A stretch of 64,000 nt of DNA from Macrostomum lignano (Eukaryota). The notes beneath the pieces were generated by a model. The model was not told the DNA's origin, did no database searches, and saw nothing but the letters and a program-made list of their open reading frames with translations. The DNA is taken from NCBI GenBank assembly GCA_002269645.1, contig NIVC01000366.1:248001-312000 (forward strand), read 5' to 3'. Below, piece after piece: positions 14,395-39,115 of this stretch; the first letter of the stretch is position 1; every line of letters begins with the position of its first letter. The translations under genes were made by a program, and so were the position numbers.

Positions 14395-14770
14395 GTAGTC
14401 AATCAATATCTACTCAGCCCAGGTGTCTCATCTCTATCGCTATCTCAGCCCAGGTGTATCGTCTATCGCTATCTCAGCCCAGGTGTCTCATCTCTATCGC
14501 TATCTCAGCCCAGGTGTATCGTCTATCGCTATCTCAGCCCAGGTGTATCATCTCTATCGCTATCTCAGCCCAGGTGTATCGTCTCTATCGCTATCTGAGC
14601 CTAGGTATCTCATCATTAGTTAATGGCTATCTCAGCCCAGGTATCTCATCAATAGTCTATGGCTATCTCAGCCCAGGTATCTCATCAATAATCTATGGCT
14701 ATCTCAGCCCAGGTATCTCATCAATAGTCTATGGCTATCTCAGCCCAGGTATCTCCCCAGCCAGCCCAGG
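14395..14770. repeat. EXT1 intron 1 minisatellite, core CTATCTCAGCCCAGGT
   Basis: Tandem units of about 30 bp sharing this core. Confidence 0.9.
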
Positions 14771-14813
14771 TATTAAATTATAGCTCACTACACCTCACCT
14801 GTCGCACCCACAG

Positions 14814-15236: not shown

Positions 15237-15269
15237 GTTTACTTTAATGCTTTATGAGCACTCAATCCC

Positions 15270-15680
15270 CAGTTACTGGGCCAGTCACACAGATCCCAGT
15301 TGCTGGGCCAGTGCTGGGCCAACCTCCCAGATCCTCAGTTGCTGTTGGGCCAGCCACCCAGATCCTCAGTTGCTGGGCCAGTGCTGGGCCAACCTCCCAG
15401 ATCCTCAGTTGCTGTTGGGCCAGCCACCCAGATCCTCAGTTGCTGCTGGGCCAAACTCCCAGATCCTCAGTTGCTGGGCCAGCCTCCCAGATCCTCAGTT
15501 GCTGCTGAGCCAGCCTCCCAGATCCTCAGTTGCTGCTGAGCCAGCCTCCCAGATCCTCAGTTGCTGCTGAGCCAGCCTCCCAGATCCTCAGTTGCTGCTG
15601 AGCCAGCCTCCCAGATCCTCAGTTGCTGCTGAGCCAGCCTCCCAGATCCTCAGTTACTGGGCCACCCACAAATCCTCAGC
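15270..15680. repeat. EXT1 intron 2 minisatellite, 28-31 bp, core CCAGATCCTCAGTTGCTG
   Basis: Tandem units. The same family recurs at 21400-21880 and 23953-24349. Confidence 0.9.
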
Positions 15681-20605: not shown

Positions 20606-20796
20606 TTTTGATCAAAGCCCAGTTCTAAAAAAACTAGCGGAAATTCAATCCAGTCTAACCCCAGTCTAACCCCAGTTCAAAACATTCTAACGGAAGTAAG
20701 GTTTAGCCATAGACAAAATGATCCTCAGTCTGAATTGAATTTCCGCTAGTTTTTTTAGAACTGGGCTTTGATCAAAATTGAACGTGAAAAGGTGTA
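20606..20796. mobile_element. Palindromic MITE, left-truncated copy of the 37156-37389 element
   Basis: 44-bp inverted arms at 20606-20649 / ~20734-20776. Right terminus ATTGAACGTGAAAAGGTGTA is the same as in the second copy. Confidence 0.8.
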
Positions 20797-20980
20797 CTAC
20801 TACTACTACTACTGCATAGGTCTGATTAATACTCAATGAGAACCCCGCGTATTAGCTCAATATAATTAATACGACACAGTAAATATGAAGAAAAATTGTC
20901 TAAAGAAATTTTGACCATCGTATCTAAGCCAATAAAAAAGCTGTTTTATTTCGAAATGTTAATATTATAATCTACCGAAG

Positions 20981-21399: not shown

Positions 21400-21880
21400 T
21401 GTTCAGCTGCTGAGCAACCAGCCTCCCAGATCCTCAATTGCTAGGCCAGCCTCCCAGATCCTCAGTTGCTGGGCCAGCCTCCCAGATCCTCAGTTGCTGG
21501 GCCAGCCTCCCAGATCCTCAGTTGCTGGGCCAACCTCCCAGATCCTCAGTTTCTACCTAGCCAGCCTCCCAGATCCTCAGTTGCTGGGCCAGCCTCCCAG
21601 ATCCTCAGTTGCTGGGCCAGTCTTCCCGATCCTCAGTTGCTGGGCCAGCCTCCCAGATCCTCAGTTGCTGGGCCAGCCTCCCAGATCCTCAGTTGCTGAG
21701 CCAGCCTCCCAGATCCTCAGTTGCTGGGGCCAGCCTCCCAGATCCTCAGTTGCTAGGCCAGCCTCCCAGATCCTCAGTTGCTAGGCCAGCCTCCCAGATC
21801 CTCAGTTGCTGGGGCCAGCCTCCCAGATCCTCAGTTGCTAGGCCAGCCTCCCAGATCCTCAGTTGCTGGGGCCAGCCTCC
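21400..21880. repeat. 28-bp minisatellite GATCCTCAGTTGCTGGGCCAGCCTCCCA downstream of EXT1
   Basis: Tandem units of the same family as EXT1 intron 2. Confidence 0.9.
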
Positions 21881-22199
21881 ATTGACATTTGCAATTACAG
21901 CCGATAGCTCGTTACAAAATGCAATTTTGTCTTCCCAGCAAAATGCAATTTTATGTCTTCCCAGCAAAATGCAATTTTATGTCTTCCCAGCTGTTATCAG
22001 TATATATATATGCAATACATATATCACTATATGTATGATATATGTATTGTAATCAATGATACATGATATGCATTCAATTCTTGTTAGCTAAGCTATTCGA
22101 CTAGTCACCCTTGCTCTGCAATGAAGAAAAATACCACTTCGTGCTTTCAGAAAAATCGCCCTCAAACAGAAATTCGCAAGTGTCTTTGTAAATTGATTG

Positions 22200-23400
22200 A
22201 AATACAATTTTGTTCAGTCAGACCTCGATTCGCTCATTCGACTGTTTTATGACTTTCAACTGTTTTTTTTAAATACAACTCGATAGGTGCTTTGACGAAT
22301 ATTTGCATGCTTCACTGGATAAATTTATGTCATGCGAGTCTTTAATTTGTGTTTTCTTAGTCTAAAATACTACCTTAAAGACGCGGTCGTAACACAGTTT
22401 TTAGAAAATGGGGTGTAAAAAATGAACTGTGATTTCGTCAAAAAGGTCTGAGTCTCCAAGACGCCGTCATCAGGTTTCAGAAAGTTAAAGACCGAAACCG
22501 TATCTGCGTGAATTCTCGTCCAGTATTTTATCGGGCAGTACAGCGGCTGCGTGCTACCAGACCCTCTGTTCAGCCCTCGGTAACCAAGCCCCATCCATCT
22601 GTATGGGCTACGGCTAGTTCAGCCGCTTCCAGAGTCGAAAGTCGTTGCTTTCTTGCAGTGACACCTTGACGAAGATCAGCGAGTGTGACGAATCGACAGT
22701 TAAAGAATCTTGTCTGGGTTTTTCGGATTCAACCAGTCGTTAAGATCCTGTTCAGTGTCGCTCAGAAGCAGGCCGGCATGGAGTTCGCGCGTCTTATGCT
22801 TGACAATTTTGAAAGCGACGTCTCAAAATCAGTTGGATAATATTCTCAAAGGGGGTGAAAGCTGGGTCGTCATTGGGTCACCATAGACGGTGATGCGCCG
22901 CTGAAATTCTGCCGCGAGCGAACCGTTGAAAGGTGATGCGATGGCTGCCAACTTTTTCCCCGTCACTGCGGCATCTTGCGGCCAGTGTTGCTTGAGCACG
23001 GCGCCACAGTGAGTGCTGGATTGTACAGCACCGTCTTCTTGCCGCAGGTGCTGCAACCATTTGATCAAGAGCGGCCAAAGTCTGGGGGAGAAGGGCAGCT
23101 TCCTTCGCCCAAAAATATACTGAGGCACAGAGCAGGGGCGACCCAGCAATACAAGACAACGCAGCTGCCGCATCCGGCATATTCGCCCGGCCTCGCGCCT
23201 TGTGATTTCTTGCTCTTTCAAAAACTGAAGAACTTGATGGGGAGGCGATTCGACTTGAGATAGGAGCTCGGGAATGTCCTGCAAGCTGAGCTGGGCTCAA
23301 TCCAAAAATCTGATTTAAGGTTTTTCAACTCTTGGTTCAAGCGAATGCAACAAATGTTTGGATCTGGATGGAATTTCTGTTTAGAAATGCGATTAGCTCC
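22200..23400 (+). pseudogene. Decayed mariner transposase (copy 1)
   Basis: LDNILKGGESWV (degenerate TGDESW) and LPHPAYSPGLAPCDFLLFQKLK, with frameshifts and stops. TIRs not resolved. Confidence 0.8.
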
Positions 23401-24668
23401 TTTAATTGTAGATATACAAATTTAGCTGAATCCAACTATGTGAAGTACAATTTTATGAGAACTTCATAAGGGACACATATATGTAAATATATGTAAATTG
23501 AGTAGCTTGAATAAACATTGTAATTATACTTTTACCCAGACGCAATGAAAAAATATTTTGGCCATTATTCCACAGTTTTGATGTGTACCATAGACATTTG
23601 GATTGAAAAAATCCATCGCTCAGTATTTTTGTTAATAAATTCAGAACAACAAGAAGTAAATGAACAAAAAGGAAAAATCATTAAAACTAAAGTACCAGCT
23701 ACACGAAAAGAGTTAATAATAAATGTCACAGCTAGTGCAGTTTATCAGTTTGTAGTCGAAATTTGACAATGTAAAAATCAATTTGTCACCCAAAGTGAAA
23801 CATGCACAGTTCTCAAAGCCGCAGTTTCCAAAGATGCTCGACACTTTAGCCTGATGATTTGGCACTGCAAAAGGAGTTGGTCTATGTTGAATGTTTTCTA
23901 TGAAAGAGAAATACAGATGAGATAAATACAGAAGAATACAGAAATACTGATGAGATCCTCAGTTGCTGGGCCAGCCTCCCAGATCCTCAGTTGCTGGGCC
24001 AACCTCCCAGATCCTCAGTTTCTACCTAGCCAGCCTCCCAGATCCTCAGTTGCTGGGCCAGCCTCCCAGATCCTCAGTTGCTGGGCCAGTCTTCCCGATC
24101 CTCAGTTGCTGGGCCAGCCTCCCAGATCCTCAGTTGCTGGGCCAGCCTCCCAGATCCTCAGTTGCTGAGCCAGCCTCCCAGATCCTCAGTTGCTGGGGCC
24201 AGCCTCCCAGATCCTCAGTTGCTAGGCCAGCCTCCCAGATCCTCAGTTGCTAGGCCAGCCTCCCAGATCCTCAGTTGCTGGGGCCAGCCTCCCAGATCCT
24301 CAGTTGCTAGGCCAGCCTCCCAGATCCTCAGTTGCTGGGGCCAGCCTCCATTGACATTTGCAATTACAGCCGATAGCTCGTTACAAAATGCAATTTTGTC
24401 TTCCCAGCAAAATGCAATTTTATGTCTTCCCAGCAAAATGCAATTTTATGTCTTCCCAGCTGTTATCAGTATATATATATGCAATACATATATCACTATA
24501 TGTATGATATATGTATTGTAATCAATGATACATGATATGCATTCAATTCTTGTTAGCTAAGCTATTCGACTAGTCACCCTTGCTCTGCAATGAAGAAAAA
24601 TACCACTTCGTGCTTTCAGAAAAATCGCCCTCAAACAGAAATTCGCAAGTGTCTTTGTAAATTGATTG

Positions 24669-25869
24669 AAATACAATTTTGTTCAGTCAGACCTCGATTC
24701 GCTCATTCGACTGTTTTATGACTTTCAACTGTTTTTTTTAAATACAACTCGATAGGTGCTTTGACGAATATTTGCATGCTTCACTGGATAAATTTATGTC
24801 ATGCGAGTCTTTAATTTGTGTTTTCTTAGTCTAAAATACTACCTTAAAGACGCGGTCGTAACACAGTTTTTAGAAAATGGGGTGTAAAAAATGAACTGTG
24901 ATTTCGTCAAAAAGGTCTGAGTCTCCAAGACGCCGTCATCAGGTTTCAGAAAGTTAAAGACCGAAACCGTATCTGCGTGAATTCTCGTCCAGTATTTTAT
25001 CGGGCAGTACAGCGGCTGCGTGCTACCAGACCCTCTGTTCAGCCCTCGGTAACCAAGCCCCATCCATCTGTATGGGCTACGGCTAGTTCAGCCGCTTCCA
25101 GAGTCGAAAGTCGTTGCTTTCTTGCAGTGACACCTTGACGAAGATCAGCGAGTGTGACGAATCGACAGTTAAAGAATCTTGTCTGGGTTTTTCGGATTCA
25201 ACCAGTCGTTAAGATCCTGTTCAGTGTCGCTCAGAAGCAGGCCGGCATGGAGTTCGCGCGTCTTATGCTTGACAATTTTGAAAGCGACGTCTCAAAATCA
25301 GTTGGATAATATTCTCAAAGGGGGTGAAAGCTGGGTCGTCATTGGGTCACCATAGACGGTGATGCGCCGCTGAAATTCTGCCGCGAGCGAACCGTTGAAA
25401 GGTGATGCGATGGCTGCCAACTTTTTCCCCGTCACTGCGGCATCTTGCGGCCAGTGTTGCTTGAGCACGGCGCCACAGTGAGTGCTGGATTGTACAGCAC
25501 CGTCTTCTTGCCGCAGGTGCTGCAACCATTTGATCAAGAGCGGCCAAAGTCTGGGGGAGAAGGGCAGCTTCCTTCGCCCAAAAATATACTGAGGCACAGA
25601 GCAGGGGCGACCCAGCAATACAAGACAACGCAGCTGCCGCATCCGGCATATTCGCCCGGCCTCGCGCCTTGTGATTTCTTGCTCTTTCAAAAACTGAAGA
25701 ACTTGATGGGGAGGCGATTCGACTTGAGATAGGAGCTCGGGAATGTCCTGCAAGCTGAGCTGGGCTCAATCCAAAAATCTGATTTAAGGTTTTTCAACTC
25801 TTGGTTCAAGCGAATGCAACAAATGTTTGGATCTGGATGGAATTTCTGTTTAGAAATGCGATTAGCTCC
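24669..25869 (+). pseudogene. Decayed mariner transposase (copy 2, within the duplication)
   Basis: Same as 22200-23400 at offset 2469. Confidence 0.8.
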
Positions 25870-27148
25870 TTTAATTGTAGATATACAAATTTAGCTGAAT
25901 CCAACTATGTGAAGTACAATTTTATGAGAACTTCATAAGGGACACATATATGTAAATATATGTAAATTGAGTAGCTTGAATAAACATTGTAATTATACTT
26001 TTACCCAGACGCAATGAAAAAATATTTTGGCCATTATTCCACAGTTTTGATGTGTACCATAGACATTTGGATTGAAAAAATCCATCGCTCAGTATTTTTG
26101 TTAATAAATTCAGAACAACAAGAAGTAAATGAACAAAAAGGAAAAATCATTAAAACTAAAGTACCAGCTACACGAAAAGAGTTAATAATAAATGTCACAG
26201 CTAGTGCAGTTTATCAGTTTGTAGTCGAAATTTGACAATGTAAAAATCAATTTGTCACCCAAAGTGAAACATGCACAGTTCTCAAAGCCGCAGTTTCCAA
26301 AGATGCTCGACACTTTAGCCTGATGATTTGGCACTGCAAAAGGAGTTGGTCTATGTTGAATGTTTTCTATGAAAGAGAAATACAGGTGCTCAAGTATAGT
26401 TGCCGAACTTACCATTTGAAAGATGCACTACTTGGTTAAGTTGGCATGCGACTGATGAGCTTCGTCTGATGAGCTTCTTTGGTACCGCAGTATCCAAGCT
26501 GGGATTCTTTGGGACTGTCGGCTGCTCGACTGAATTGATTGGCCGCTTTCAGGCATCGTTTATAGCCGTCGAGGCGTTGAAGACTGCATGGTCGCGTTTT
26601 CTTCCTAGGTAGCGCCGCACGGTTCGTTCAGTCGTCGACAGGAAGATTTTTTCAATTAATAAGCGCGGCTGTTTGACGAGATGCACTATAGCCATAGTTG
26701 TTCGACAAGACAAATAGCTTTTTCTCCCACTACTCGCTTTCCTGATTTCTTGCAAGACGCAAGCAAAATCAGCACTCATCACAGTGTTGTCTATGGTCAA
26801 ACTAAGCCACACAACTCAGTCGTCTATGGGTAAAAGAACTCTTAAAACAGCCAATTGAAGCATGATAAAAAGTGTGGAATAATGGCCGCAAAAGTGTGGA
26901 ATAATGACTGCGCGCTGAGTGAAAGTATAGATACAATGCACTTGTATAGTATGCAACTTCGTTGAATAATGGACAAAACTCGAGTTTCTATGGCCACTAT
27001 TCAACGAAGTTGCATATATACAATCTACCATTGCTATCGAAACTCGAGTGGACTAATCTAGGTCCTATGGGACAGACGTTTCTACGTGTGCTTTTGTTTA
27101 TGGAACAACAAATAGGACATCTCTTGTTTAGCTAGACAATTTTTGGTA

Positions 27149-27570
27149 TAGTATTTGTCATGCTATCTCAGCCTAGAGACATCCAAACTCAGCCAGCCCA
27201 TCTCGACAGTGCGATTTTTTACGTAAGCCAGTCAAGTTTTACCATAGACATGCCTCTTAAGGCCATGCTATCTCAGCCCGGGACATGCAATCTCAGCCAC
27301 TTTTCAGATGCTATGTCAAGCTGTCCGTGGCTTAGTCTGTGATCGAAGCAAATGAAACAGAATGAGAGCAACAAGCGACGAAGACGAAGCGAGAAGTGTT
27401 TGCAATTGAAATCTATATTGGCTGAGATTGCATGTCCCAGGCTGAGATAGCATGGCCTTAAGAAGCATGTCTATGGTAAAAGTCGACTAGCTCGAGCCAA
27501 AAAAACGCATTGCGGAATGGGACTGGCTGAGTTTGGATGTCTCTAGGCTGAGATAGCATGACAAATACTA
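27149..27570. mobile_element. TA-flanked foldback MITE (422 bp)
   Basis: Arms of about 150 bp in near-perfect inversion, starting TAGTATTTGTCATGCTATCTCAGCCTAGAGACATCCAAACTCAGCCAG. TA at 27147-27148 and 27571-27572. Confidence 0.9.
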
Positions 27571-27663
27571 TAGTTGAGCCTACGCTCTCATTTTTCTCAA
27601 TCGTTGCTTCTTCAATTGACTTATTTTGCAACGTTGAAACCCCAAAGAAACTGGGTGCAGAAA

Positions 27664-29316
27664 ATGTACAGACCAGTCAGCAGCATTGGCCCTCAGACCA
27701 GTGTTGATCCGATGGAAGTTATGGAAACTCTAGTCGCTATGGAGCAGCGGTTTCGCCAAGTGTTCCAACAGATACTGATAGACACGGATTTCCCGCTGAA
27801 GTACGACGTCGCTTCTAACGAGGCAGACGGACCACTGTTCTTCGTGTTAACGAAGCAGCCAACGTCTTTAACCTACGTGATCGAAGCGCTCCCGGTTGTT
27901 TTCGACCAATCAGCATCAAAAGCGCATGTTAAACGAGTCGAAGAGCTGACCTATCACCCAGTGTTTGAAGATGTGATTGAACGGTACACCAAAACCCGGA
28001 GGAAACCAAACCCAGTCATCCTGGAGACTAGGTCTGCCGATTTTTGCTACATGGTTACTATCAAGATCGAAGTGCTGCCACTTGACCGTAGTGTACGAGC
28101 GGTGAATTTCACTCTACTGCGCGAGTACCAGATCCTGCTTCACATTTGGGAGAGCTACAGAAGCGACCTCAACGCTAATAAGTGCAACTCTGATCAGCTG
28201 ATCGGCTTCCCGATGCCATTCGAATTTCGAAACATCGAGGGCACAAAATACGATCTTCCGCACGGCCACAGCTGGGAGTATTATAGCCCGTTTGGTAAGC
28301 TTGAATCTCTGCAGCGAGTCTCCTTGACGTCTATAACATCCAGCAAGGACAGTCGGCCGATCAAGTCAACTCTGAGCTACATGTCCATAGAGAAAGTCGG
28401 GCCCAGCCTCAGCTACCTAATGGATCTGATGCTGTCGCAGCGCAAGTTTTTCAACATATCCTCGGCGCTGAAAGTCTACGACCAGCTTATCTGCCGACTA
28501 TTAGTGATGCACAAATACTCGGTTATTCATGGCGACATCAATCCGTCGGCGTTATGTTTTGGCACCGGCGAGGCCGTCAATGTGCTCTATTTGAACAATT
28601 TCGAGGCCGCCTTGCTGGCGCCCACATTCGGCCTACCGCTGCCTTTCTTTCACGACCGCTTCGTCTCGTACAGCCGTGTGAAGGACAAATCGGTCCACTT
28701 CGTCCACGACCTCGAGTCAGCTTTCTACGTGTTCCTATACTTGATGCTTGGCCGACTGCCGTGGGACTCTCGTCTGGGCGTTAGCGAAACTGAGAGTTCG
28801 ACTGTTGCGCCCGTTGGCGTCGACATCTCGGTCAATGATATCCGCTCAGAGAAGAGTCGCACCATGGAGGAGAAGGAAAAGTTCTGGCAGTCGTCTAATC
28901 AACTGCTGTGGATGGTGAAGTCAATAGACACAGAGTTCAGGGACTCCATGTATCGGAACTTTGCGTCCGACATTGTGGAGGCGATCTATGCCAGAGTAAA
29001 GGAGAGCATGTCCACTTGCCAGTCGCTGAGTCAGTCTGCCTACTCGAAGAGTGTCTTCATCACCGGCACGGCTCCTTACAATGCCTACTTTGGTGTTAGA
29101 AAGATAATTGCCAGTTTCTTCCGCTTTGAGTCGCGAAGCAACGCCTTGAAAGATCCGGTGTGGTCGGCCAAGACCGACATGCTGTTTAAGGAGGACGCTA
29201 ACGACCGTCGCATAGCCTGGGATTTGAGCTCCTGGTGCTGGAACTACTTGGACGCCGATGCCAATTCTGTTAAACGACAGTCGTCAAGAAAGTCGCAGAT
29301 CGTCGTTAGTTCATAA
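27664..29316 (+). CDS. Intronless casein kinase 1-like protein, predicted pseudokinase A (550 aa from first ATG)
   Basis: VTIKIE (beta3), LLREY (alphaC), IEKVGPSL, IHGDINPSA, YLNNFEAA and HDLESAFYVFLYLMLGRLPW parallel the CK1 motifs VAIKLE, ELLGPSL, HRDVKPDN, DFG and DDLESLGY..GSLPW. Confidence 0.85.
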   Translation: MYRPVSSIGPQTSVDPMEVMETLVAMEQRFRQVFQQILIDTDFPLKYDVASNEADGPLFFVLTKQPTSLTYVIEALPVVFDQSASKAHVKRVEELTYHPVFEDVIERYTKTRRKPNPVILETRSADFCYMVTIKIEVLPLDRSVRAVNFTLLREYQILLHIWESYRSDLNANKCNSDQLIGFPMPFEFRNIEGTKYDLPHGHSWEYYSPFGKLESLQRVSLTSITSSKDSRPIKSTLSYMSIEKVGPSLSYLMDLMLSQRKFFNISSALKVYDQLICRLLVMHKYSVIHGDINPSALCFGTGEAVNVLYLNNFEAALLAPTFGLPLPFFHDRFVSYSRVKDKSVHFVHDLESAFYVFLYLMLGRLPWDSRLGVSETESSTVAPVGVDISVNDIRSEKSRTMEEKEKFWQSSNQLLWMVKSIDTEFRDSMYRNFASDIVEAIYARVKESMSTCQSLSQSAYSKSVFITGTAPYNAYFGVRKIIASFFRFESRSNALKDPVWSAKTDMLFKEDANDRRIAWDLSSWCWNYLDADANSVKRQSSRKSQIVVSS

Positions 29317-31051
29317 TCAGACAGTTTGGTCAGAAAACCAGGTTCATTCGAACACTTCCGACGTCAGCTTTAGGATACTTTATTAGGTCTAGGACATTTC
29401 TTATCAGATGGCATACAAGTAGCGTGTCACAATGGTACCGATTCTGATTATTGCAGCTAAGCATAGGTTTTTTATTTAGAATCTCTGCGTCTAGAGCGTA
29501 TATGCAGTCTTTTCTTCTAAGCTTTTTCTAAATATATGGTCAGTCTGATTCGTTTGAGAATCAGCAGCTAAGTAGCCATTTGAAATAGCGCTTATAAATC
29601 TAAAATTCATATTTTCCTGCATTAACTATCTTGGATCTGTGGCTAATTTTTTATGCGTAATGTCAGAATGGAATGAAAATTGTCATTGTCCGGCGCTGTA
29701 CGCTCATTAGTTAACTCTTGGAAATCATTGCGTACGGCTACTGAGTATTCATTCATGAGACAATGCGCTTGGTTATGAATGGTTTTGGTGGTTAACAGTA
29801 TTTACCAGCCTGATTTTTCACGAGTGACTAGAATTAAGAATTAAGAGAATCACTCTCCAACCCTCAAAACCCAAAACCATATACAAAATCTACCATCGTT
29901 GGTTTGGTTCTTGCCCCTAGTTCACAATTGAACTCAAAAATGTTGAAAAAGTGTAAAAAGTACAAACTAAAATGAACCTAAAACAGTAGTAACCTTTTCC
30001 GAGGTTTAGTAAAGTAATTACTGGTTTCACTTGATTAAAAATCTACTTTTTTGTTTAGTTGAACCAAAATTGCCATACTGTATTTGCTAATATTTCCACT
30101 TCCGATGTGCCTCCCTACATGTACCTCTCGCCTCTTTGCTATCGGCCTACTACAATTGACAGTTTAATTTGATTTATGGTTCTCCCAGTCTTCTCGCTTT
30201 TTGGTTACCTGGGTCCTCGTGAATCTGTTGACTATTATGTAGATAAAATCTAATCCCTATAAATTTATCCCCACACTCAAACCCTGGTACTCGTAGATTT
30301 TAACATTTGTGACTAGATGGTCCCCTTGGCTAATATACCTGAACTTCAATAGGGCTCCATACTTCTATTAAAGATTACGTACGAGTATATATCAAGTCAA
30401 TCCCCATGAAGAATCTTCCCACTCTAAAACCCGTACCCGTATGCCCCGGTGTCTTGGTTTCAAGCTACATGGATTTGGATTGAAGCCACATCGAAATATG
30501 GCTTAAATTTGAAATCAGCAACCCTCATAAACCACATTTATGTAAAACTGGAACTATTTTAAAATATATACCTTAAGTTTAAGCTTAAAATGCTCCGAAT
30601 TCGGTCGGGGACGCGGCCTTTTGCAGCCTAAAAGACCATGACTATACCTTGCTAAGGTCGAGAAGAGTGCGTAAATTATTGTAATTTGAGGCTGACTTTA
30701 TTCTCACCTTGAGAGGGCTTCAGGACATGACATCGTATTTTTTGTTGGTTTTTGTTTGGTTAAAGTATCCGATTCCATTATTTTTTACTTACAATTATTT
30801 ACAACTGTGCATGGTCTCATAGAAGGTCAAAATCACAATTTACTGTAACTTTAGACTTGTCCACGCGACTTATTTTGCTTTGAGTTTAAGTAGCCGCCAT
30901 AGACAATTCTGAACTTCTAACGAAGAGTCGAGGGAGCCTCATTAGGGGCGAAGCAATAAAAGCAGCACTTAGTAAAATCAAGCTCTTCGTCATCATTTAG
31001 TGCAGAGCCGTCAGAAAACAACTGACAGATTAGTCGCAGCAAGCAAAACAT

Positions 31052-32734
31052 ATGGAAATGCACGAAGTCTTAACCCGAACCAACAGCATGATTCTGGGCT
31101 CAGAGGTCAGCCGGAGTACATTGCTCACTCGAAGCACTACTGCAGACATATCGGCCGTCGATTGGATTGCCCAACTGAATGCAAAATGCAAGACAATTTT
31201 GAGCGCCATGTGCTCTCATTCGGATCTGCTGCTCAAATACGACTTGACGTCAAGAGAACCGGACTCGCCGATGATCTACGTGAACACGCGTATGCCGTCA
31301 AAGTTCATGTTCAACATGGAAGCATTTCCCAGGCTGTCCAAACTGGAGAAGCTCAACGGCAAGCAGTTGCAAGTGGAAGAGCTGGTTTACCACAAAATGT
31401 TCGAGGCAGTGATTGAGCGGTACACCAATTCCAATCAGAAGCCGAACCCGGTGCTGCGCGACACCCGATCGTCGGAGTTCTGCTACCGAATGGCCATCAA
31501 GGTAGAAGCGGTGCCTGCTCAGAAGGCTTTGAAGGCTAGAAGATTAATTCTTCTACGAGAATTTCTAATCTTACAACACTTGTGGGAGTGCTTTCACAGG
31601 GAAATGAAAGCCAAGGTCTGCGGCACGGATCAGCTGATCGGCTTTCCCATGCCGTTTGAGTTTAAAAATGTTGTCGGCTGTTCGGAATTCGATTTTACTG
31701 AGGACGGAATGACCTACATGCATTACAATATCCACGGAGCAGAGGAGAAGGTACTGATCACCACTATTCCGCAGACTGTGCCGGATTCCACCAGTACTAC
31801 TATTGGCTCATCGCTGAGCTACATGGCAACGGAGAGGCTGGGGCCCAGTCTTGGCTACCTCATCGATCTGATGCGATCGCAAGGCAAGACTTTCTCAGTA
31901 TCCAGCGCACTGAAGATCTACGATCAAATTCTCTGCAGAATGATGATCATGCACAAGTACGGCGTTGTGCACTGCGACCCGAATCCGTCCTGCTTCTATT
32001 TTGGTCCAGGTGAAAGCTGCAACGTGCTCTATATCAGCGAGCTCGGCTCCGCTCTTGTGAAGCCGGAGTTTAACATGCAGGTGCCCAGATTTCACGACCG
32101 ATTTGTCTCGTACCTGCGTTTTCGCGAGCGTCGCTGCCACTTTGTACAGGACGTGGAGTCGGCATTCTACATTTTTCTCTACATGCTTGTTGGCCGGCTG
32201 CCCTGGGATGGGCGCACCCTCGGCAATCTCAAGCCTGCTGAGGGGATGTCGATGGTTCAGCCAAGCGATGACCCGTACACAGATCGCAGCCTGACTATTG
32301 ACGACAAGGAGAAGTTCTGGCAGAACCAGGACACGATAAGTCGCGCTATTCGCGTAGTTGAAATGGAAATTTACGATCCATTGTACGTCAGCTTCACCGC
32401 AGACCTGTTGGAAGCATTGTACTCGCGTACTCGCGAATCGCTTCAGCTGAGCTCGTCAGTAGGCATTGCTAACTACATGAAGGACTGCTGCGTAGGCAAC
32501 ACTCAGGCTTACAATGTGTATTACAATTTGCGCAGGGTCATTGCCACTTACTTCCGCTTCGAGATCCTTAACCAGCCACTCAAGGACCGGCAGGGCAGCG
32601 CGAGGCTGGAGCAGCTCAACCGCTCAAGTACAAACGATTTGAGGATCGCCTTCGACCTCAGCCATTGGTGCTGGAACCACCTCGATCCGAACCCGAATTC
32701 GAGCACTTCGAAAAGGATTTCTTTCAAAACGTAA
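31052..32734 (+). CDS. Intronless casein kinase 1-like protein, predicted pseudokinase B (560 aa), paralogue of A
   Basis: MAIKVE, LLREF, TERLGPSL, VHCDPNPSC, YISELGSA, QDVESAFYIFLYMLVGRLPW. Collinear with ORF A over nearly its whole length. Confidence 0.85.
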   Translation: MEMHEVLTRTNSMILGSEVSRSTLLTRSTTADISAVDWIAQLNAKCKTILSAMCSHSDLLLKYDLTSREPDSPMIYVNTRMPSKFMFNMEAFPRLSKLEKLNGKQLQVEELVYHKMFEAVIERYTNSNQKPNPVLRDTRSSEFCYRMAIKVEAVPAQKALKARRLILLREFLILQHLWECFHREMKAKVCGTDQLIGFPMPFEFKNVVGCSEFDFTEDGMTYMHYNIHGAEEKVLITTIPQTVPDSTSTTIGSSLSYMATERLGPSLGYLIDLMRSQGKTFSVSSALKIYDQILCRMMIMHKYGVVHCDPNPSCFYFGPGESCNVLYISELGSALVKPEFNMQVPRFHDRFVSYLRFRERRCHFVQDVESAFYIFLYMLVGRLPWDGRTLGNLKPAEGMSMVQPSDDPYTDRSLTIDDKEKFWQNQDTISRAIRVVEMEIYDPLYVSFTADLLEALYSRTRESLQLSSSVGIANYMKDCCVGNTQAYNVYYNLRRVIATYFRFEILNQPLKDRQGSARLEQLNRSSTNDLRIAFDLSHWCWNHLDPNPNSSTSKRISFKT

Positions 32735-33359
32735 GCAGTCTGACTGTCGCCTACAGAAATGACAGTAATCTTTGGATAAAATTTTAATTCGTTATTATTT
32801 TTTAATCATTCCTTTGCTACTTACTGTACTACTTAAAGTACTACGAAGTATTTTACCTGAACTAATTATCGATTTAATTTTGACTTGTATCTTTACTCAG
32901 CTGTAACGGTACGGTACGTAAGAGCAACGTAACATACTATAGTGACTTAAAAGCGTCGAAAAAGTATTCGTAATATTACAGTAACATAGAGATGCTACAC
33001 GTACTACTACTACTTGTAACTCCGCAGCTTTTGTTATAACCGGTAAAAGTTGATATGCACGCGTTTTGCAATTGGTTCGCAGAGTAAACCGTATGTACGT
33101 ATTGTAATATTCTACCAATGCAAGCCACTGTAATACCAAAATGGTGTTATGCCACAGTTCACTTCGCAGCAGTGCAGGCCAGCGCTGCAATTGCTACGAG
33201 TTTCGCTGCAGAATTCCGTACGACTTTGCGTTAATTATTTGTTTAACTGTATAAGCTTTGAAAACATTGAACGAACGATTGAGATAGACACGGGAATTTA
33301 TTTGATATGAATAAGCAGCATTGAAATACTGTTTTTCTATCGAGACTTTAGTAAGTTTA

Positions 33360-36300
33360 CGGTGACTTCCAATTAGGAAATAATATGCAGTAGCAAAGCA
33401 AGTCAAGCGATACACTGTCCAGTAGAAGGTAAAGGATATGGTAAAGTGTAGCAATACAGAGCGAAAAACATTGTTTGAAACGGTTTCGAAATTTATAGAG
33501 TACGAGTGGAACTATGTCGCTGCCCTTAGTTATGTACTTGACGACATACTTAATCGCCTTGACTGTCGCGCAGATCTCGACGTTCAGGTGACACCTAAAC
33601 TCGCGCAGCAGCGCAGGGCAGTACGGCACCACCCAGCGGTTGTCAAAGGTGAAATTCGCCTTGTGACCGCCGCGCAGCTTTGCGACCTTCGTCACCGAGA
33701 AGCCGCCCATCTCGGTTGATCTGCGACGATAGTGCGGGTAGCCGTCCTCTTGAATCATCGTTACTGCCTGGAACTCTCTCGGATAGCGCTTGCTGCATGC
33801 GCCATTCTCCATGCACGACGCGGCTGGATTCAGCTGCATTCCACAGGGACCATGCAGGAGATTCTCAGCGACCAGCTTGTGCAGGTCCGCGTCGGCAACG
33901 GGATCCGGGAGTTCTGCACTGATGATGGCGTCATACTGATCCGGCTTCAGCTTGACAGCCAACCAAAGCAGTGCGTGCACGTGGGGAAGACCTGTTTAAA
34001 GTGGGATTTGGTTCATAAATAAAAAGTTTATGAGCAAAAGTTTATCAGGAAATATAACTAATTTTTAATTGTCTCCAGGAATAGCATTTTAACAATTTTA
34101 TTAGTACAGATATTTAATTATGCAATAAATATTGGCATGATAGTAGTTACCTCGCTTTTGGTACTCGAGAGCGCAGACTCGAGCCAGCGTGTCCCCAAAC
34201 AGACTCTTTAGCCTGTCGAGGAAGGCCTTCTTCTTCAGCTCGAACACCCGGGCGGTGATGTCCGGCCGATCCACGGCAGTTTGGCCAGGCAGTAGCTCAG
34301 CAAGGATCTCAGGCCACTTCGGGTTACACGTCATCGTCAGGAACAGGTCTGGGCGGCCGAAGGCGTGCACATACGCCATGGCATCCTGCTGACGCTCCAG
34401 ACGGTACCGAGGGCTAGACGTCAGGATGACGTGGTTCCCGATGTCGATCCCCATCGGGTCGATCTCGCTCGGGTCCCCGTCGTTCGCATGGAGGGCACCT
34501 CGCAATCCGCGCAGGCGCTCTGAAAGCAGATCCTTCTGGTGCAACCGGATGTAGTTGAGCCTCTCCGACTCAATCTTGGCAGCCTGGTCGACCAGATACT
34601 GCTGGAACAGCCGGCCTCCGTAGTGCAGGCTGTTGAACTGGCCTGGGCGCACCTGGATCATGAAGGCGTAATACTTCATGATAGTGATGCCACGATCCTG
34701 CTTGAGTCCGATGCTCCAGCCGTCCTCACCAAATGGGAACAGCAGGACGTACTCCAAGGGATCGTAGGAGCGGTGGGTGTCACAGATGCTCTGGAGGCCT
34801 GTGAATTACAGAATCAAAAATGAATTCGTCTTTTCTTAATGCAAATACAGCAGTTATATACATCAAACAGAATGCTTGAATCTTCCAGTTCACAAAAAAG
34901 CAAGAGATAATACATTGATTCAATAGATTTATTCGTTTGTATTAACAAATAAAAATAAGTTTAATATAAAGTTCGAGACGCAGAACTCACCACCGCCCCT
35001 CAGACGCAAAATCACATCCCGCCGTCGCGTCTGGGCTGCGCCTTCGGTATCGTCAAGGTCCGTCAGGATGCCGACTTCACTGCACTCGGGCAAATTGAAG
35101 CGTCTGGCATGCTCCCCAGATGGACGGGCATCGGGGTTGATGACGACCTTGGCGCTTTGCAGCTGAGGGTCGTTGCGGAGCAAGTCAACAGCGGACTTGA
35201 GGCTGCACACGTAGCCGTTGCACGCATGCAGCATGGCTTGCAGCTCTTCCAGCAGACGACCGTTCAGTCCGGTGGCCCACTGCAGCCGGGTTTGCAGCTC
35301 TTGGTCCACAAAAAAGACCTGGCAGAACCTGGCCTCATTTCCCGGATCCGGCAACAGGCTGCCGATCCGATGGTGCATCTGACCTGGTATTATGGTTATG
35401 ACCATGGAGGATGAAGCTCGGGTTCCAGCCGGGCTGCTCACGCTGCTTGGCACCGAGCGACGTCATGTGGAGCGCGCCGTTGTACTTCCTGATGTCCTTC
35501 AGGAACTGAGAGCTGTCTGGGTGCTGGCCAGTCAGAAGCCGCTTCAGGACATCAGGGGGGTCACGGCGGGGCTCCAGGACGGTCTGAGTTGGATTAAAGT
35601 TGGATTAATCACTTTCAGCAGCACATCACGCAATCGTCTATGACTCCATTGGTGGTCAGAGGTTTCATACTGTATACATTGATTAGTATAAAAAGCATTA
35701 ATGAGGCAGCGATTCAAGTGAACTAAAGTAAAAAATGAACTCACCTTTCCAGCGTGGCAGCAAATGCTAGCTGGCTCGTCTTTCCAGCGTAGCGCGCTGC
35801 AGTGCGGACATTGGCGGTCCATGCGACCGAGGACATGTGGCTGGTGTGCCAGCTCCAGCAGTCTGTGGCAACGAAAAAAGTGCATTTCAATCATTACTCA
35901 TAAATGAATTATAAAATTCAGTTGTACATGCATAAAGTTTATTAGTATCAGAGAAGAGATCAGTCTCGCACGTAAGAATAGTCTTTATCAAATATCAGTA
36001 ATCTTTAATCGTAATCTTTATCAGTCTCGCACGTAAGAATAGCAGAATCAATAATCAGGAACGCCTACCTGTCTCGGCGCCAGCCTGCCTGTGCATTTAG
36101 ACGGCGGTCGCGGTCATCAGCGGACTCAGCCGCGCGAATCTGGTTCTGGCGCTGCCGCTGCGCCTCCAGGCGATGCTGATGGACTGTCTCATCCTCGGCT
36201 TCACGGCTTTCAGCTGTGCGCTGCCGCTGCGCCTCCAAGCGATGCTGGCGCTCCTCGGGTGTCTCCGAGGCCCTGCGCTTCTTAGCTGCCGATGCAGCGC

Positions 36301-37146
36301 GTGTAGATCGGGAAATATTTCCGCGTTTGGGCATTTTCTTCCGCGTAGACAATAAACAATGAATAGGCAAAAATAAACAAAGCAAAAGTAAACAAATAGA
36401 AAGTAGAGATGATGATAATAAGCAAAAATAAGATAATAGCCAATAGGAAAATAAGGAAAAATAAGCAAATGGAAATATCGCCAGATTCAGCAAATTGGAG
36501 AGAAATCTTTAGAGAATTGAAAATTCGCCTCCTTAAGAAGGGCCTAGTGTACACGATTTTTTGTCAGTAAAAATCAATAAAAAAGAACCTTAAGCCCACC
36601 AGTCTGTCCACTGCCCAGCCGATGCAATGGACTGACTACAGGCGCCAATAAAAAAACCAACTGAATCTCGGGCACAGTCCTATTTATCTGCTTATCAACT
36701 GCGATGTACACTCAGCCCAAGCCCAACCCCCCATTCCGGGGGAATCGTTAAATTTAATTGAACCTCCCAACACGCGGGGGGTTATTTGCATTGAACGCGG
36801 AACACGAGTACCCAACCCCCCCCCTCCCAAAACACAGCGACGTGAGGGCGGAGGTTGGGGTGGCTTTTTTACAAACAGACTGCAACCCCTCCACTGGAGA
36901 GGCAGAGAGGCCACAGAAGGGCCAAAGAAGGTTAGGAAATCAGTTTTCTGCTTTTTTAGGGATCTCAAATGAAAAAATGAAAGATTAAAATAGCTATAAA
37001 CTCAATCCGGAAAATTTGCAGTTTTTCCCATATAAGTTTCAACGCTGACTTGCCAGTAGTCTAGGAGAAAAGTTGCAACAAACAAACATCGCGTCAGTTT
37101 TAGTATAAGGGGAGAGGGAGAGGAGAGGAGAGAGGGAGAAGAGAAT
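33360..37146 (-). mobile_element. Helitron, 3'-truncated (Rep only, no helicase)
   Basis: 5'-end-like sequence TATACTAAAACTGACGCGATGTTTGTTTG...GACTACTGG after a CT-rich start (~37060-37146), followed by a spliced Rep coding region. 3' hairpin/CTRR not found. Both boundaries are approximate. Confidence 0.85.
33500..36334 (-). pseudogene. Helitron Rep (HUH endonuclease); exons approx. 36334-36069, 35862-35745, ~35670-34991, 34798-34151, 33991-33500
   Basis: N-terminal ETPEERQHRLEAQRQR repeats; Zn motif CPHC..CCHAGKV; GQMHHRIGSLLP; YDPLEYVLLFPFGEDGW; GRLFQQYLVD; GRPDLFLTMTCNPKWPEI; EYQKRG|LPHVH (HUH); HGPCG; DNRWVVPY; KYVVKYITKG. In-frame stops near 35525-35545. Confidence 0.9.
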
Positions 37147-37155
37147 AAAATATTT

Positions 37156-37389
37156 TACTACACCTTTTCACGTTCAATCCTGAACAAAGTCCAGTTCCAA
37201 AAAAACTAGCGGAAATTCAATTCAGACAATTCAGACTGGGGACAATTTTGTCTATGGCTAAACCTCGCTTCCGTAGCAGAATGTTTTGAACTGGGGTTTG
37301 TTGCCCCAGTCTGAATTGTCTGAATTGAATTTCCGCCAGTTTTTCCAGAACTGGACTTTGTTCAAAATTGAACGTGAAAAGGTGTAGTA
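37156..37389. mobile_element. TA-flanked palindromic MITE (about 230 bp)
   Basis: TIR CTACACCTTTTCACGTTCAAT with extended inverted arms, TA at both ends. Second copy at 20606-20796. Confidence 0.85.
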
Positions 37390-38069: not shown

Positions 38070-39115
38070 TCACACTACGGACTTTTTCCCGAAAAAATCT
38101 ACCGGCGGGTTCATCTGCGACGTTCGGCGCATAAAGTTTGCCGATGATCGCCGAGCACCGTTGGGCAACGCATTCGACGCCACGGCCTCCTCGGCGTCGC
38201 CGCCGCGGTACAATTTGTACAACTCCTCTACGATTTCGGCCGCGCACACGTCGCCGATATTTTCGGCAATCATCCGCAATAGAAAGATGCCGTCGTGCGA
38301 CAGGAACTGGTTAACAAACTGCTTCCGCTTTTGTTTGTCTTCTTTGGATTCGTCGCATGCCGATCGGAGTACCATCAGGTAGCGCTTGACGAACGTCTGT
38401 CGGTTCTTATACACCAGCAGGCGGATCAGCCAGACTATTGTAGAGCCGCCAGTCAGGGATAAGCACAGGATCGTCCAGAACCAAAGGAATATGTAGATCT
38501 TCTCGTTCAGAAGGTTGACTGGCAAGACGCACTGCACAGACCGGATGTTCCACTGGCCGACGTGTTTCGACGGCACGTCGCAGAAAGTGACCCTGGGAAA
38601 CACCATGGTCTGCTCCCACTCGCGGCCGCGGAGCAGATTGCTCATACAGTGCCAGCCGAATGCCAGACTGTCGAAGCCTAAGAATGACTGCATAATAAAC
38701 AAGTGAGCAACTCCCACCAAAGCGTACACCATCTTGTTCGTGATGTACAAAGCAAGCAGCATCGTGCCCGACCGTTTGCCGAACCAGAAACAGGGCAGGA
38801 ACTTGTGGCAGGCTTGGTGCAGCTTTTGGCGCGGCTCCGTCTTAAATGTAACCTGGCGACCGCAGTCTGGCCCGGTCCTGCTGTCCTGGTAATGACCGCA
38901 GCCCCGACAGTTTATTGTCTTCTCAATGTGTCTAGCCAGAAAGTTTACCAACTTCTTCTTTCGTTCCTGGTCCATTGTAGCGGTTTCTGCGGCAAACTTT
39001 ACAATCGCGTTCGGATTGTAGCCAGTCTGCTGGGCCATGATCTTCCACACCAGGTGAGGTGTGTACACGAGCAGTGCCTCCAGTGCCAGTACGAATGGCA
39101 CCCATTGGTAGTAGT
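38070..39115 (-). CDS. Innexin exon 2 (terminal)
   Basis: Acceptor CCTTTCAG. (N)YYQWVPFVL, FPRVTFCD and CVLPVNLLNEKIYIFLWFW are innexin signatures. Stop ends at 38070. Confidence 0.95.

What the first reader, a model, noticed from the sequence alone, without database searches (positions are those of the whole stretch)
27664..32734. Tandem pair of intronless, highly divergent CK1-like pseudokinases
Seen: two collinear ORFs of about 550-560 aa, 1.7 kb apart, with no introns although the neighbouring host genes are spliced. Both keep the beta3 Lys (VTIK/MAIK), alphaC Glu (LLRE) and catalytic Asp. Both have lost the HRD Arg (HGD/HCD), the catalytic-loop Lys and Asn (DINPSA/DPNPSC vs DVKPDN), the DFG Asp (NFE/ELG) and any recognisable Gly-rich loop. 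They share an N-terminal region of about 130 aa with no motif I recognise (KYD..S.E.D.P; EEL.YH..FE.VIERYT....KPNP), an insertion of about 45 aa before the hinge, and a conserved C-terminal tail (RIA(W/F)DLS.WCWN(Y/H)LD). Established: losing both Mg-binding residues defines pseudokinases. Inference: long open frames and conserved non-catalytic blocks despite deep divergence imply selection on a non-catalytic function. This may be an undescribed lineage-specific family that arose by retroposition followed by tandem duplication.
Basis: partly seen in the sequence, partly recalled or inferred. Interest (0 to 1): 0.7.

Follow-up and report, generated by a model that had tools for sequence, protein, structure and literature searches.

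The report
Flatworm-specific CK1-derived pseudokinase gene pair
Two neighbouring intronless genes of the flatworm Macrostomum lignano encode casein-kinase-1-like proteins that have lost most of their catalytic residues yet are kept intact by selection; they belong to an undescribed family so far found only in this species, a modest addition to the known pseudokinases.

Summary
ORF-A (27664-29316) and ORF-B (31052-32734) are intact, 41% identical, and are annotated single-exon genes of Macrostomum lignano contig NIVC01000366.1. ORF-B belongs to gene cluster Mlig016624.

Sequence profiles and an AlphaFold model (pLDDT 72, pTM 0.80) place them in the CK1 group, closest to CK1 delta/epsilon. The Gly-rich loop, the catalytic-loop Lys and Asn, and the DFG Asp are gone.

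It holds a degenerate beta1/G-loop/beta2 hairpin plus a helical insert of about 50 aa between beta2 and beta3.

Every full-length relative found among 1.84 billion representatives is from M. lignano. They form two pseudokinase clades and one clade (Mlig007526, Mlig019091, Mlig018370) that keeps GxGxxG, the beta3 Lys, H(H/L)DLKPDN and DFG/DYG and shares both inserts. That clade and the second pseudokinase clade have introns, so retroposition is plausible but unproven.

Homeologous copies show purifying selection: dN/dS is 0.06 for ORF-B and 0.38 for ORF-A, with no indels, against indel-rich flanks.

Most likely these are non-catalytic binding proteins that use a CK1-type C-lobe. No expression or biochemical data were found. 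I rate this a new member of a known kind, of moderate interest.

The parts
27664..29316 (+). ORF-A: single-exon CDS, 550 aa, CK1-derived pseudokinase
   Evidence: annotated as a 550-aa gene. Intact with 0 indels in homeologs L007 and L008. dN/dS is 0.38 against L007.
31052..32734 (+). ORF-B: single-exon CDS, 560 aa, CK1-derived pseudokinase (gene cluster Mlig016624)
   Evidence: dN/dS is 0.063 against L007, binomial p = 2e-6. AlphaFold model has pLDDT 72 and pTM 0.80. Foldseek hits are CK1-group kinases.
27838..27891 (+). ORF-A degenerate beta1/Gly-rich loop/beta2 hairpin (FFVLTKQPTSLTYVIEAL, aa 59-76)
   Evidence: Aligns column for column with FVLGSGAYGSVFQV of P0013 and FLIGAGAFGSVFRV of P0014.
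31274..31327 (+). ORF-B degenerate beta1/Gly-rich loop/beta2 hairpin (IYVNTRMPSKFMFNMEAF, aa 75-92)
   Evidence: The model predicts a strand at aa 86-91.
27937..28044 (+). ORF-A family-specific insert between beta2 and beta3 (VEELTYHPVFEDVIERYT..KPNP.., aa 92-127)
   Evidence: The YHPxF part is shared with the active-looking clade. KPN is specific to the pseudokinase clades.
31373..31480 (+). ORF-B family-specific insert between beta2 and beta3 (aa 108-143), predicted helical
   Evidence: Model helices at aa 115-125, 133-138 and 142-145.
28054..28071 (+). ORF-A beta3 strand VTIKIE with retained Lys134
31490..31507 (+). ORF-B beta3 strand MAIKVE with retained Lys150 (CK1 'AIKLE' signature)
28228..28371 (+). 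ORF-A insert between beta4 and beta5 (aa 189-236)
   Evidence: Present in the whole family, including the active-looking clade.
31664..31813 (+). ORF-B insert between beta4 and beta5 (aa 205-254)
   Evidence: small hairpin at aa 223-233.
28528..28551 (+). ORF-A ex-catalytic loop HGDINPSA (HRDxKPxN equivalent; Arg, Lys and Asn lost)
31970..31993 (+). ORF-B ex-catalytic loop HCDPNPSC. The homeologs carry D309N (L008) and C314S (L007) here.
28597..28605 (+). ORF-A DFG-equivalent triad NFE
32039..32047 (+). ORF-B DFG-equivalent triad ELG
29209..29253 (+). ORF-A conserved C-terminal motif RIAWDLSSWCWNYLD
   Evidence: WC(W/F)N is invariant in all nine pseudokinase sequences of A2 that were compared and absent from the active-looking clade.
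32642..32686 (+). ORF-B conserved C-terminal motif RIAFDLSHWCWNHLD
29317..31051 (.). Intergenic spacer between the two genes. It evolves faster than the ORFs.
   Evidence: Window against L007: 1.9% substitutions plus 64 indel columns, compared with 0.85-0.95% and 0 indels in the ORFs.

Best explanation
What it is (high confidence, about 0.85). ORF-A and ORF-B are two expressed-gene models of the flatworm Macrostomum lignano. They belong to a family of casein-kinase-1-derived proteins found so far only in this species.

The family has at least eleven clusters at 50% identity, each in 1-4 near-identical homeologous copies. It is built on a CK1 delta/epsilon-like kinase domain with four additions:
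- an N-terminal helix;
- a helical insert of about 50 aa between beta2 and beta3;
- an insert of about 45 aa between beta4 and beta5;
- a helical C-terminal extension.

One clade (Mlig007526, Mlig019091, Mlig018370) keeps all the catalytic motifs. Two clades have lost them in different combinations. The window's clade lost the Gly-rich loop, the catalytic-loop Lys and Asn and the DFG Asp. Its members P0004 and P0005 also lost the beta3 Lys and the catalytic Asp.

The window's clade has intronless coding regions, whereas both other clades have introns. That fits an old retrocopy which then duplicated in tandem and dispersed.

How it most likely works (inferred, about 0.35). These are non-catalytic proteins that use the well-preserved CK1-type C-lobe to bind partners or CK1-type substrates. 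Preserved elements are the hinge E.LGPSL, the alphaE DQ..CR, the Arg equivalent to CK1 delta Arg178, D.ES.FY and LPWD. Two newly fixed motifs add to this: KPN in the beta2-beta3 insert and WC(W/F)N in the tail. The proteins would then act as scaffolds, decoys or allosteric partners, possibly of the active-looking sister kinases.

Shown: fold, family membership, motif loss, purifying selection, taxonomic restriction within the databases searched.
Inferred: catalytic inactivity, binding function, partners, retroposition.
For: - ORFs and their similarity.
- Organism and annotation.
- The GenBank gene models are transcriptome-derived, and the average gene has 4.9 introns: PMC5730564.
- CK1 affinity: the profile against PDB gives CK1 delta/epsilon at 1e-11, TTBK at 6e-8 and VRK2 at 0.01. 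P0013 against PDB gives CK1 delta at 3e-20. An HMM built from generic CK1-like hits matches all members at E 1e-23 to 1e-42 over the C-lobe.
- Structure: the AlphaFold2 model on 13 family sequences has pLDDT 72 and pTM 0.80. The top 50 Foldseek PDB hits are all VRK1, CK1 or TTBK, at E about 3e-9 and target TM 0.51-0.64.
- Motif table showing the active-looking clade and the two degenerate clades.
- Taxonomic restriction: the exhaustive hmmsearch of 1.84e9 representatives gave 13 strong family matches (E 1e-22 or better), all from M. lignano; all but the 5'-truncated P0015 and fragmentary P0012 are full-length. After them come only C-lobe-only CK1 hits.
- Purifying selection: the window against homeolog L007 has 16 differences in ORF-B, 3 of them non-synonymous (dN/dS 0.063, p = 2e-6), and 14 in ORF-A, 8 of them non-synonymous (dN/dS 0.38). 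There are no indels in 3.3 kb of ORF, against 91 indel columns in 2.5 kb of flanks.
- Between paralogues dN is 0.45-0.73 while dS is saturated.
- Relaxed ex-active site: 2 of the 4 homeolog replacements in ORF-B fall in the 8-residue ex-catalytic loop (D309N, C314S).
- Intron data.
Against: - No direct evidence for transcription level, tissue, protein or partners. Searches of the papers and supplements held found no entry for Mlig016624 or its close paralogues.
- Catalytic inactivity is predicted from sequence only. A, B and P0002 still keep the beta3 Lys, the alphaC Glu and the catalytic Asp.
- ORF-B has Glu at the DFG-Asp position. EFG is functional in titin (PMC2639636).
- Four of the five subclade members have an acidic residue two positions after the lost Asp.
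- ORF-A's dN/dS of 0.38 is not significantly below 1 on its own (p = 0.095).
- Bootstrap support for family monophyly in the NJ tree is modest, at 60-78%. Monophyly rests mainly on the shared inserts.
- 'Only in M. lignano' may reflect missing protein sets for other Macrostomum species.
Confidence: 0.6

Rival explanations
1. The proteins are still enzymes: atypical CK1-like kinases, or other ATP-using enzymes, that compensate for the missing Mg-binding residues. Examples would be the Glu of ELG in ORF-B, the acidic residue at DFG+2 in A, P0002, P0004 and P0005, or metal-independent catalysis as described for CASK.
For: The beta3 Lys, alphaC Glu and catalytic Asp are retained in A, B and P0002 despite 41-47% overall identity. 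Precedents for active kinases with altered motifs (titin EFG, CASK GFG, WNK) are listed in PMC2639636.
Against: The Gly-rich loop is replaced by a glycine-free stretch that contains a Pro. The precedents named above keep an intact G-loop. The catalytic-loop Lys and Asn are both lost. Sister members P0004 and P0005 additionally lose the beta3 Lys and the Asp while keeping every other family feature. One homeolog of ORF-B carries D309N, and another changes the ex-Asn position (C314S), while the rest of the protein is under strong constraint.
Confidence: 0.12
2. The ORFs are decaying retro-pseudogenes, or annotation noise that happens to remain open.
For: The CDS is intronless in a genome averaging 4.9 introns per gene. 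Transposon debris lies around the locus: a MITE 92 bp upstream of ORF-A and a Helitron fragment downstream of ORF-B. No expression table entry was found.
Against: Both ORFs are intact in three homeologous loci with zero indels, while the flanks accumulate indels. dN/dS is 0.06 and 0.38. At least five paralogous loci at 34-47% identity all keep open frames of 546-588 aa, with dS saturated. The gene models derive from a transcriptome-based annotation that excluded repeat-overlapping transcripts.
Confidence: 0.02
3. The genes are cargo of a transposon: captured by the neighbouring Helitron, or part of a larger mobile unit bounded by the MITE-like repeats at 20.6 kb and 37.2 kb.
For: A Helitron_like_N fragment lies 623 bp downstream of ORF-B. 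In homeolog L007 a 5'-truncated copy of ORF-B lies next to a Helitron PIF1 segment. Copies of one palindromic MITE flank the region.
Against: At the orthologous position in L007 the Helitron is absent, while both ORFs are present and intact (the empty site joins window 33502 to 37385). Paralogue loci L001, L002, L006 and L009 have no Helitron next to the gene. The annotation pipeline removed repeat-overlapping transcripts. The flanking repeats are self-contained hairpin MITEs, not the ends of one element.
Confidence: 0.02

Closest known systems
Casein kinase 1 delta/epsilon/alpha (CK1 family proper)
   Same: It is the best sequence and fold match. Shared features are the hinge E.LGPSL, the alphaE DQ motif, the AIK.E beta3 strand, the Arg equivalent to Arg178, DDLES-like D.ES, and LPW.
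   Different: The window proteins lack GxGxxG, the HRD Arg, the catalytic-loop Lys and Asn, and the DFG Asp. They carry two large inserts (beta2-beta3 and beta4-beta5), an N-terminal helix, and a C-terminal extension of about 75-90 aa ending in WCWN. Identity to CK1 structures is only 15-19%.
VRK3, the pseudokinase of the CK1 group (PMC2639636)
   Same: It is a CK1-group kinase fold with a degraded G-loop (TRDNQG), HGN in place of HRD, a lost DFG Asp and a retained beta3 Lys. It cannot bind ATP, yet it is conserved and acts through a non-active-site surface. ORF-A's HGD and the glycine-free G-loop are closely analogous.
   Different: This is not the VRK lineage. By sequence, VRK2 scores E = 0.01 and VRK1 1e-5, against 1e-11 and 3e-20 for CK1 delta. 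VRK3 is a single conserved vertebrate gene, whereas this is a multi-locus, single-species expansion with different inserts.
Nematode-specific CK1-group expansions (TTBKL, Worm6, Worm8; spe-6)
   Same: They are a lineage-specific multiplication of CK1-group genes. In C. elegans at least half are selectively expressed in sperm (PMC3117856).
   Different: They arose independently in a different phylum. No full-length similarity was found beyond the generic C-lobe. Parasitic flatworms have only small CK1 groups; Fasciola has 8 (PMC12837073). Expression of the Macrostomum genes is unknown.
Paired pseudokinase/kinase paralogue systems (own knowledge, not tested here: Toxoplasma ROP5/ROP18, poxvirus B12/B1, STRAD/LKB1)
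   Same: Pseudokinase paralogues coexist with active-looking sister kinases in the same genome, and the pseudokinases are tandemly duplicated and divergent.
   Different: No evidence of any interaction here. The families are not homologous beyond the kinase fold.

Membership tests
CK1 group of eukaryotic protein kinases | Sequence profile matches CK1-group kinases better than other kinase groups | tested here: met
   CK1 delta/epsilon at E about 1e-11, TTBK1/2 at about 6e-8, VRK2 at 0.01, the first non-CK1 kinase (Chk1) at 0.025. P0013 gives 3e-20 for CK1 delta.
CK1 group of eukaryotic protein kinases | Bilobal kinase fold superimposable on CK1, VRK or TTBK structures | tested here: met
   Model pLDDT 72, pTM 0.80. 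The top 50 Foldseek PDB hits are all CK1-group, with target TM 0.51-0.64. The moderate TM reflects the inserts and the tail.
CK1 group of eukaryotic protein kinases | CK1 signature residues in the C-lobe (E.LGPSL hinge, DQ in alphaE, LPW after alphaF, no APE motif) | tested here: met
   Invariant across the 13 family members: E261, G264, P265, D291, Q292, P384, W385.
Catalytically competent protein kinase | Gly-rich loop GxGxxG | tested here: not met
   A has TKQPTS and B has TRMPSK at the aligned positions. P0013 and P0014 keep GSGAYG and GAGAFG.
Catalytically competent protein kinase | beta3 Lys and alphaC Glu | tested here: met
   VTIK and MAIK; LLRE. Both are lost in paralogues P0004 and P0005 (Lys) and in P0005 (Glu to Gln).
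Catalytically competent protein kinase | Catalytic loop HRDxKxxN (Asp base, Lys, Mg-binding Asn) | tested here: not met
   HGDINPSA and HCDPNPSC: the Asp is kept, and the Arg, Lys and Asn are lost. Homeolog P0165 has D309N.
Catalytically competent protein kinase | DFG Asp (Mg-binding) | tested here: not met
   NFE in A and ELG in B. Caveat: the Glu in B might substitute, as in titin EFG.
Pseudokinase | Sequence definition: at least one of the beta3 Lys, the catalytic Asp or the DFG Asp is missing | tested here: met
   The DFG Asp is missing in both, along with the G-loop, the catalytic-loop Lys and the Asn.
Pseudokinase | Biochemical inactivity, or no nucleotide binding | not testable with these tools
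   Needs recombinant protein, thermal-shift assays and kinase assays.
VRK family (VRK3-type pseudokinase) | Closest relatives are VRK1, VRK2 or VRK3 | tested here: not met
   By sequence, VRK2 scores E 0.01 and VRK1 1e-5, against 1e-11 and 3e-20 for CK1 delta. VRK1 tops the fold list only within a near-tie of E-values.
Processed retrogene | Intronless CDS while the closest outgroup relatives have introns | tested here: met
   A, B, P0002 and P0004 are single-exon. P0013 has 3 exons and P0008 has 4. P0005 has one intron at a position not shared with either.
Processed retrogene | Identifiable intron-containing parent gene, poly(A) remnant, target-site duplication | not tested
   At 41-47% identity between the copies, such marks are not expected to survive. 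No parent closer than the P0008-P0011 clade (26-28% identity) was found.
Helitron-captured gene or transposon cargo | The gene is always linked to the element and moves with it | tested here: not met
   Empty Helitron site in L007 with both ORFs present. The paralogue loci lack a Helitron.

The most novel reading that the evidence does not exclude
The two degenerate clades (about nine 50%-identity clusters) may be dedicated regulators of the active-looking sister kinases (Mlig007526, Mlig019091, Mlig018370). This would be a home-grown pseudokinase/kinase module that arose and diversified within the Macrostomum lineage. The pseudokinases would use the retained CK1 substrate-binding C-lobe and the new KPN and WC(W/F)N motifs to gate or target kinase activity. 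A role in rapidly evolving reproductive processes is possible, by analogy with the sperm-expressed CK1 expansion of nematodes.
Probability: 0.15. Interest if true: 0.6.

Novelty: new member of a known kind. Interest (0 to 1): 0.4.

Why it matters
Pseudokinases are established signalling scaffolds and allosteric regulators, and lineage-specific kinase expansions are common. The kind is therefore not new.

What is new is an uncharacterised CK1-derived family found only in a tractable model flatworm, in which transgenesis and RNAi are available. Active-looking and progressively degraded paralogues coexist in one genome. Ex-catalytic positions are visibly drifting (D309N, C314S between homeologs) while the rest of the protein is tightly constrained.

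This gives a natural series for asking which kinase-fold features are needed once catalysis is lost. It also corrects the automatic annotation 'protein kinase domain-containing protein'.

Tried and rejected
1. The first AlphaFold run, on 5 sequences, gave pLDDT 39 and was discarded. The 13-sequence run was used instead.
2. hhalign in global mode placed the CK1 G-loop on YHKMFEAVIERY. I rejected this because P0013 and P0014 have both a true GxGxxG 50-55 residues upstream and the YHPxF motif, and the model makes FEAVIERYT a helix.
3. Helitron linkage. The similar spacing of about 630 bp to a downstream minus-strand gene at three loci looked suggestive. However, the neighbours are unrelated: no Pfam hit, a p450 and a Helitron respectively.
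4. I considered shared synteny with innexin between the window and L006 but did not pursue it. P0004 and P0005 do share an upstream DSPc phosphatase neighbour.
5. The second word-indexed homologue search, run with the 13-sequence profile, returned nothing new.
6. Expression look-ups in five papers' supplements and a full-text search for the gene IDs found only Mlig019091.
7. L001 against L002 as a further homeolog pair was uninformative, with 0 differences in the CDS.
8. The viral structure library gave only generic kinases, so there is no sign of viral origin.
9. I considered equating the near-invariant Lys419 with the CK1 delta anion-site Lys224 and dropped it, because the HMM alignment puts it at about Lys232.
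10. A scan for poly(A) signals was uninformative.

Full report
**1. Observation**

The window contains two collinear + strand ORFs at the stated coordinates. ORF-A runs 27664-29316 (550 aa from its ATG) and ORF-B runs 31052-32734 (560 aa). They are 41% identical over 535 residues, BLASTP E = 4e-163.

An exact-protein look-up identifies the window as Macrostomum lignano assembly GCA_002269645.1, contig NIVC01000366.1. Both ORFs are annotated there as single-exon genes of exactly these lengths. ORF-B belongs to transcript cluster Mlig016624.

The GenBank annotation of this assembly was derived from a genome-guided transcriptome and excluded repeat-overlapping transcripts. Genes in this genome average 4.9 introns (PMC5730564). 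The models therefore imply transcripts, and an intronless CDS is unusual here.

The neighbours are spliced: exostosin exons lie at 13763-15570 and an innexin exon at 38070-39101.

**2. Kinase affinity**

Pfam alone barely sees a kinase (E = 0.05 and 0.17). A profile of five paralogues does better. It hits CK1 delta/epsilon at E about 1e-11 over hinge-to-alphaF, then CK1 alpha and gamma, then TTBK1/2 at about 6e-8, and VRK2 at 0.01.

An HMM built from generic CK1-like hits matches every family member at E 1e-23 to 1e-42.

AlphaFold2 on five sequences failed (pLDDT 39). On thirteen family sequences it gave pLDDT 72 and pTM 0.80. The top 50 Foldseek matches of that model in the PDB are all VRK1, CK1 or TTBK, at E about 3e-9 and target TM 0.51-0.64. 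The viral structure library returned only generic kinases.

**3. Motif states**

| Feature | ORF-A | ORF-B |
|---|---|---|
| beta3 strand | VTIK (Lys134 kept) | MAIK (Lys150 kept) |
| alphaC | LLRE (Glu kept) | LLRE (Glu kept) |
| Catalytic loop | HGDINPSA | HCDPNPSC |
| DFG position | NFE | ELG |
| GxGxxG | absent | absent |

In the catalytic loop the Asp is kept, while the HRD Arg, the Lys and the Mg-binding Asn are lost.

**4. The family and a correction to the architecture**

An exhaustive hmmsearch of 1.84 billion representatives found 13 strong family matches (E 1e-22 or better), followed only by C-lobe-only CK1 hits. Eleven of them are full-length; P0012 and P0015 are partial. Every one of the 13 is a M. 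lignano protein, named 'hypothetical' or 'protein kinase domain-containing'.

Alignment A2 and an NJ tree give three clades:
- (i) ((ORF-A, P0002), ORF-B) together with (P0004, P0005).
- (ii) P0008, P0009, P0010 and P0011.
- (iii) P0013, P0014 and P0015.

Clade (iii) keeps GSGAYGSV or GAGAFGSV, AIK or AVK, H(H/L)DLKPDN and DFG or DYG. It therefore looks catalytically competent, as a non-RD kinase.

Clade (iii) also shares the family's two inserts and its helical tail. In it the true G-loop lies 50-55 residues upstream of the beta3 Lys. It aligns with FFVLTKQPTSLTYVIEAL of ORF-A and IYVNTRMPSKFMFNMEAF of ORF-B. The model agrees: it predicts a strand at ORF-B aa 86-91 and a helix over FEAVIERYT.

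- a helix of about 55 aa;
- the degenerate beta1/G-loop/beta2 hairpin;
- a helical insert of about 50 aa between beta2 and beta3.

A global hhalign that put the G-loop on YHKMFEAV is rejected on these grounds.

The motifs KPN (in the insert) and WC(W/F)N (in the tail) are invariant in all nine pseudokinase sequences of A2 and absent from clade (iii). They are gains that accompany the loss of catalysis.

Degeneration is progressive and independent between clades. Clade (ii) keeps the Asn but mostly loses the Asp. P0004 and P0005 lose the beta3 Lys and the Asp as well.

**5. Selection**

M. lignano is a recent polyploid, so homeologous loci can be compared. L008 is 99.7% identical to the window and L007 about 98% identical.

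| Region (window vs L007) | Substitutions | Non-synonymous | Indel columns | dN/dS |
|---|---|---|---|---|
| ORF-A | 14 (0.85%) | 8 | 0 | 0.38 (p = 0.095) |
| ORF-B | 16 (0.95%) | 3 | 0 | 0.063 (binomial p = 2e-6) |
| Intergenic spacer | 1.9% | n/a | 64 | n/a |
| 3' flank | 1.3% | n/a | 27 | n/a |

Pooled over both ORFs, p = 5e-6.

Among the four amino-acid replacements seen between ORF-B homeologs, two fall in the eight-residue ex-catalytic loop: D309N and C314S.

Between paralogues dS is saturated and dN is 0.45-0.73.

**6. Origin**

| Gene | Coding structure |
|---|---|
| ORF-A, ORF-B, P0002, P0004 | single exon |
| P0013 | 3 exons |
| P0008 | 4 exons |
| P0005 | one intron, at an unshared position |

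The first introns of P0013 and P0008 map within four alignment columns of each other, just after beta2.

Retroposition at the base of clade (i) is therefore plausible. It is not demonstrated: no parent gene and no poly(A) or target-site remnants were identified.

ORF-A is closer to the dispersed paralogue P0002 (46.7%) than to ORF-B (40.5%). The tandem pair is thus older than at least one dispersal event.

Transposon capture is rejected. The Helitron fragment downstream of ORF-B is missing at the orthologous site in L007, and the other paralogue loci have none.

**7. Mechanism**

By sequence these are pseudokinases. They resemble VRK3, the CK1-group pseudokinase with a TRDNQG G-loop, HGN and GFG. 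VRK3 cannot bind ATP and acts through a conserved non-catalytic surface (PMC2639636).

The strongly conserved parts are CK1 C-lobe elements, including the Arg equivalent to CK1 delta Arg178, plus the new motifs. I infer non-catalytic binding: a scaffold, decoy or allosteric role, possibly towards the active-looking sister kinases.

Residual activity cannot be excluded, for two reasons:
- Lys, Glu and Asp are retained in A, B and P0002.
- ORF-B has Glu at the DFG-Asp position, as in active titin.

No expression, localisation or interaction data were found.

**8. Comparison and novelty**

Lineage-specific CK1-group expansions are known in nematodes, where many members are sperm-expressed (PMC3117856). 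Parasitic flatworms have small CK1 groups; Fasciola has 8 (PMC12837073).

This family is a new, undescribed member of a known kind, namely pseudokinase expansions within the CK1 group. It has its own inserts and tail. Its interest is moderate.

Noticed in passing
window 27147-27572: A 426-bp MITE with terminal inverted repeats of about 75 nt lies 92 bp upstream of the ORF-A start codon. It is absent from both homeologous loci (L007, L008), so it is a recent insertion in this copy's promoter-proximal region. An 80%-identical inverted copy lies at L008 2054-2478.
   Followed up: partly
window 33357-35894 (- strand): A truncated Helitron: Helitron_like_N at E = 2e-45, with broken reading frames and no PIF1 helicase part. 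Homeolog L007 has an empty site here (window 33502 joins 37385) and carries a fuller copy with PIF1 a few kb away.
   Followed up: partly
L007 15371-17350: A 5'-truncated duplicate of ORF-B, starting at Lys150, plus its 3' flank. It lies next to the Helitron PIF1 segment inside the innexin gene. It is almost identical to L007's own full copy, so it is either a very recent duplication or an assembly artefact.
   Followed up: partly
window 21484-23950 and 23953-26420: A 2.47-kb tandem duplication, each unit containing a 28-bp minisatellite (21416-21880 and 23941-24349). It is single-copy in homeolog L008.
   Followed up: partly
window 20606-20800 and 37156-37389: Two copies of a short palindromic (hairpin) MITE-like element, about 90% identical to each other. 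They flank the region but are self-contained.
   Followed up: no
window 31970-31993 (ORF-B aa 307-314): Homeolog replacements D309N (L008 copy) and C314S (L007 copy) both fall in the ex-catalytic loop HCDPNPSC. That is 2 of the 4 replacements seen among the three ORF-B copies.
   Followed up: yes
window 187-1266 (+): An intact-looking mariner/Mos1-type transposase ORF of 359 aa (HTH_48 plus Transposase_1).
   Followed up: no
window about 56999-60164 and beyond: A long satellite with a 20-bp period, seen as AATAAA recurring every 20 or 40 bp, in an AT-rich region (GC 0.26-0.33).
   Followed up: no
window 54490-56304 (-): A 604-aa low-complexity, proline- and lysine-rich repetitive ORF. It gives only sub-threshold extensin-like and HC2-like Pfam hits.
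   Followed up: no
L006 and L009: Paralogues P0004 and P0005 both have a dual-specificity phosphatase (DSPc) gene as their upstream neighbour. This suggests that pair arose by segmental duplication. P0005 has one intron of about 620 bp at a position not shared with other family members.
   Followed up: partly
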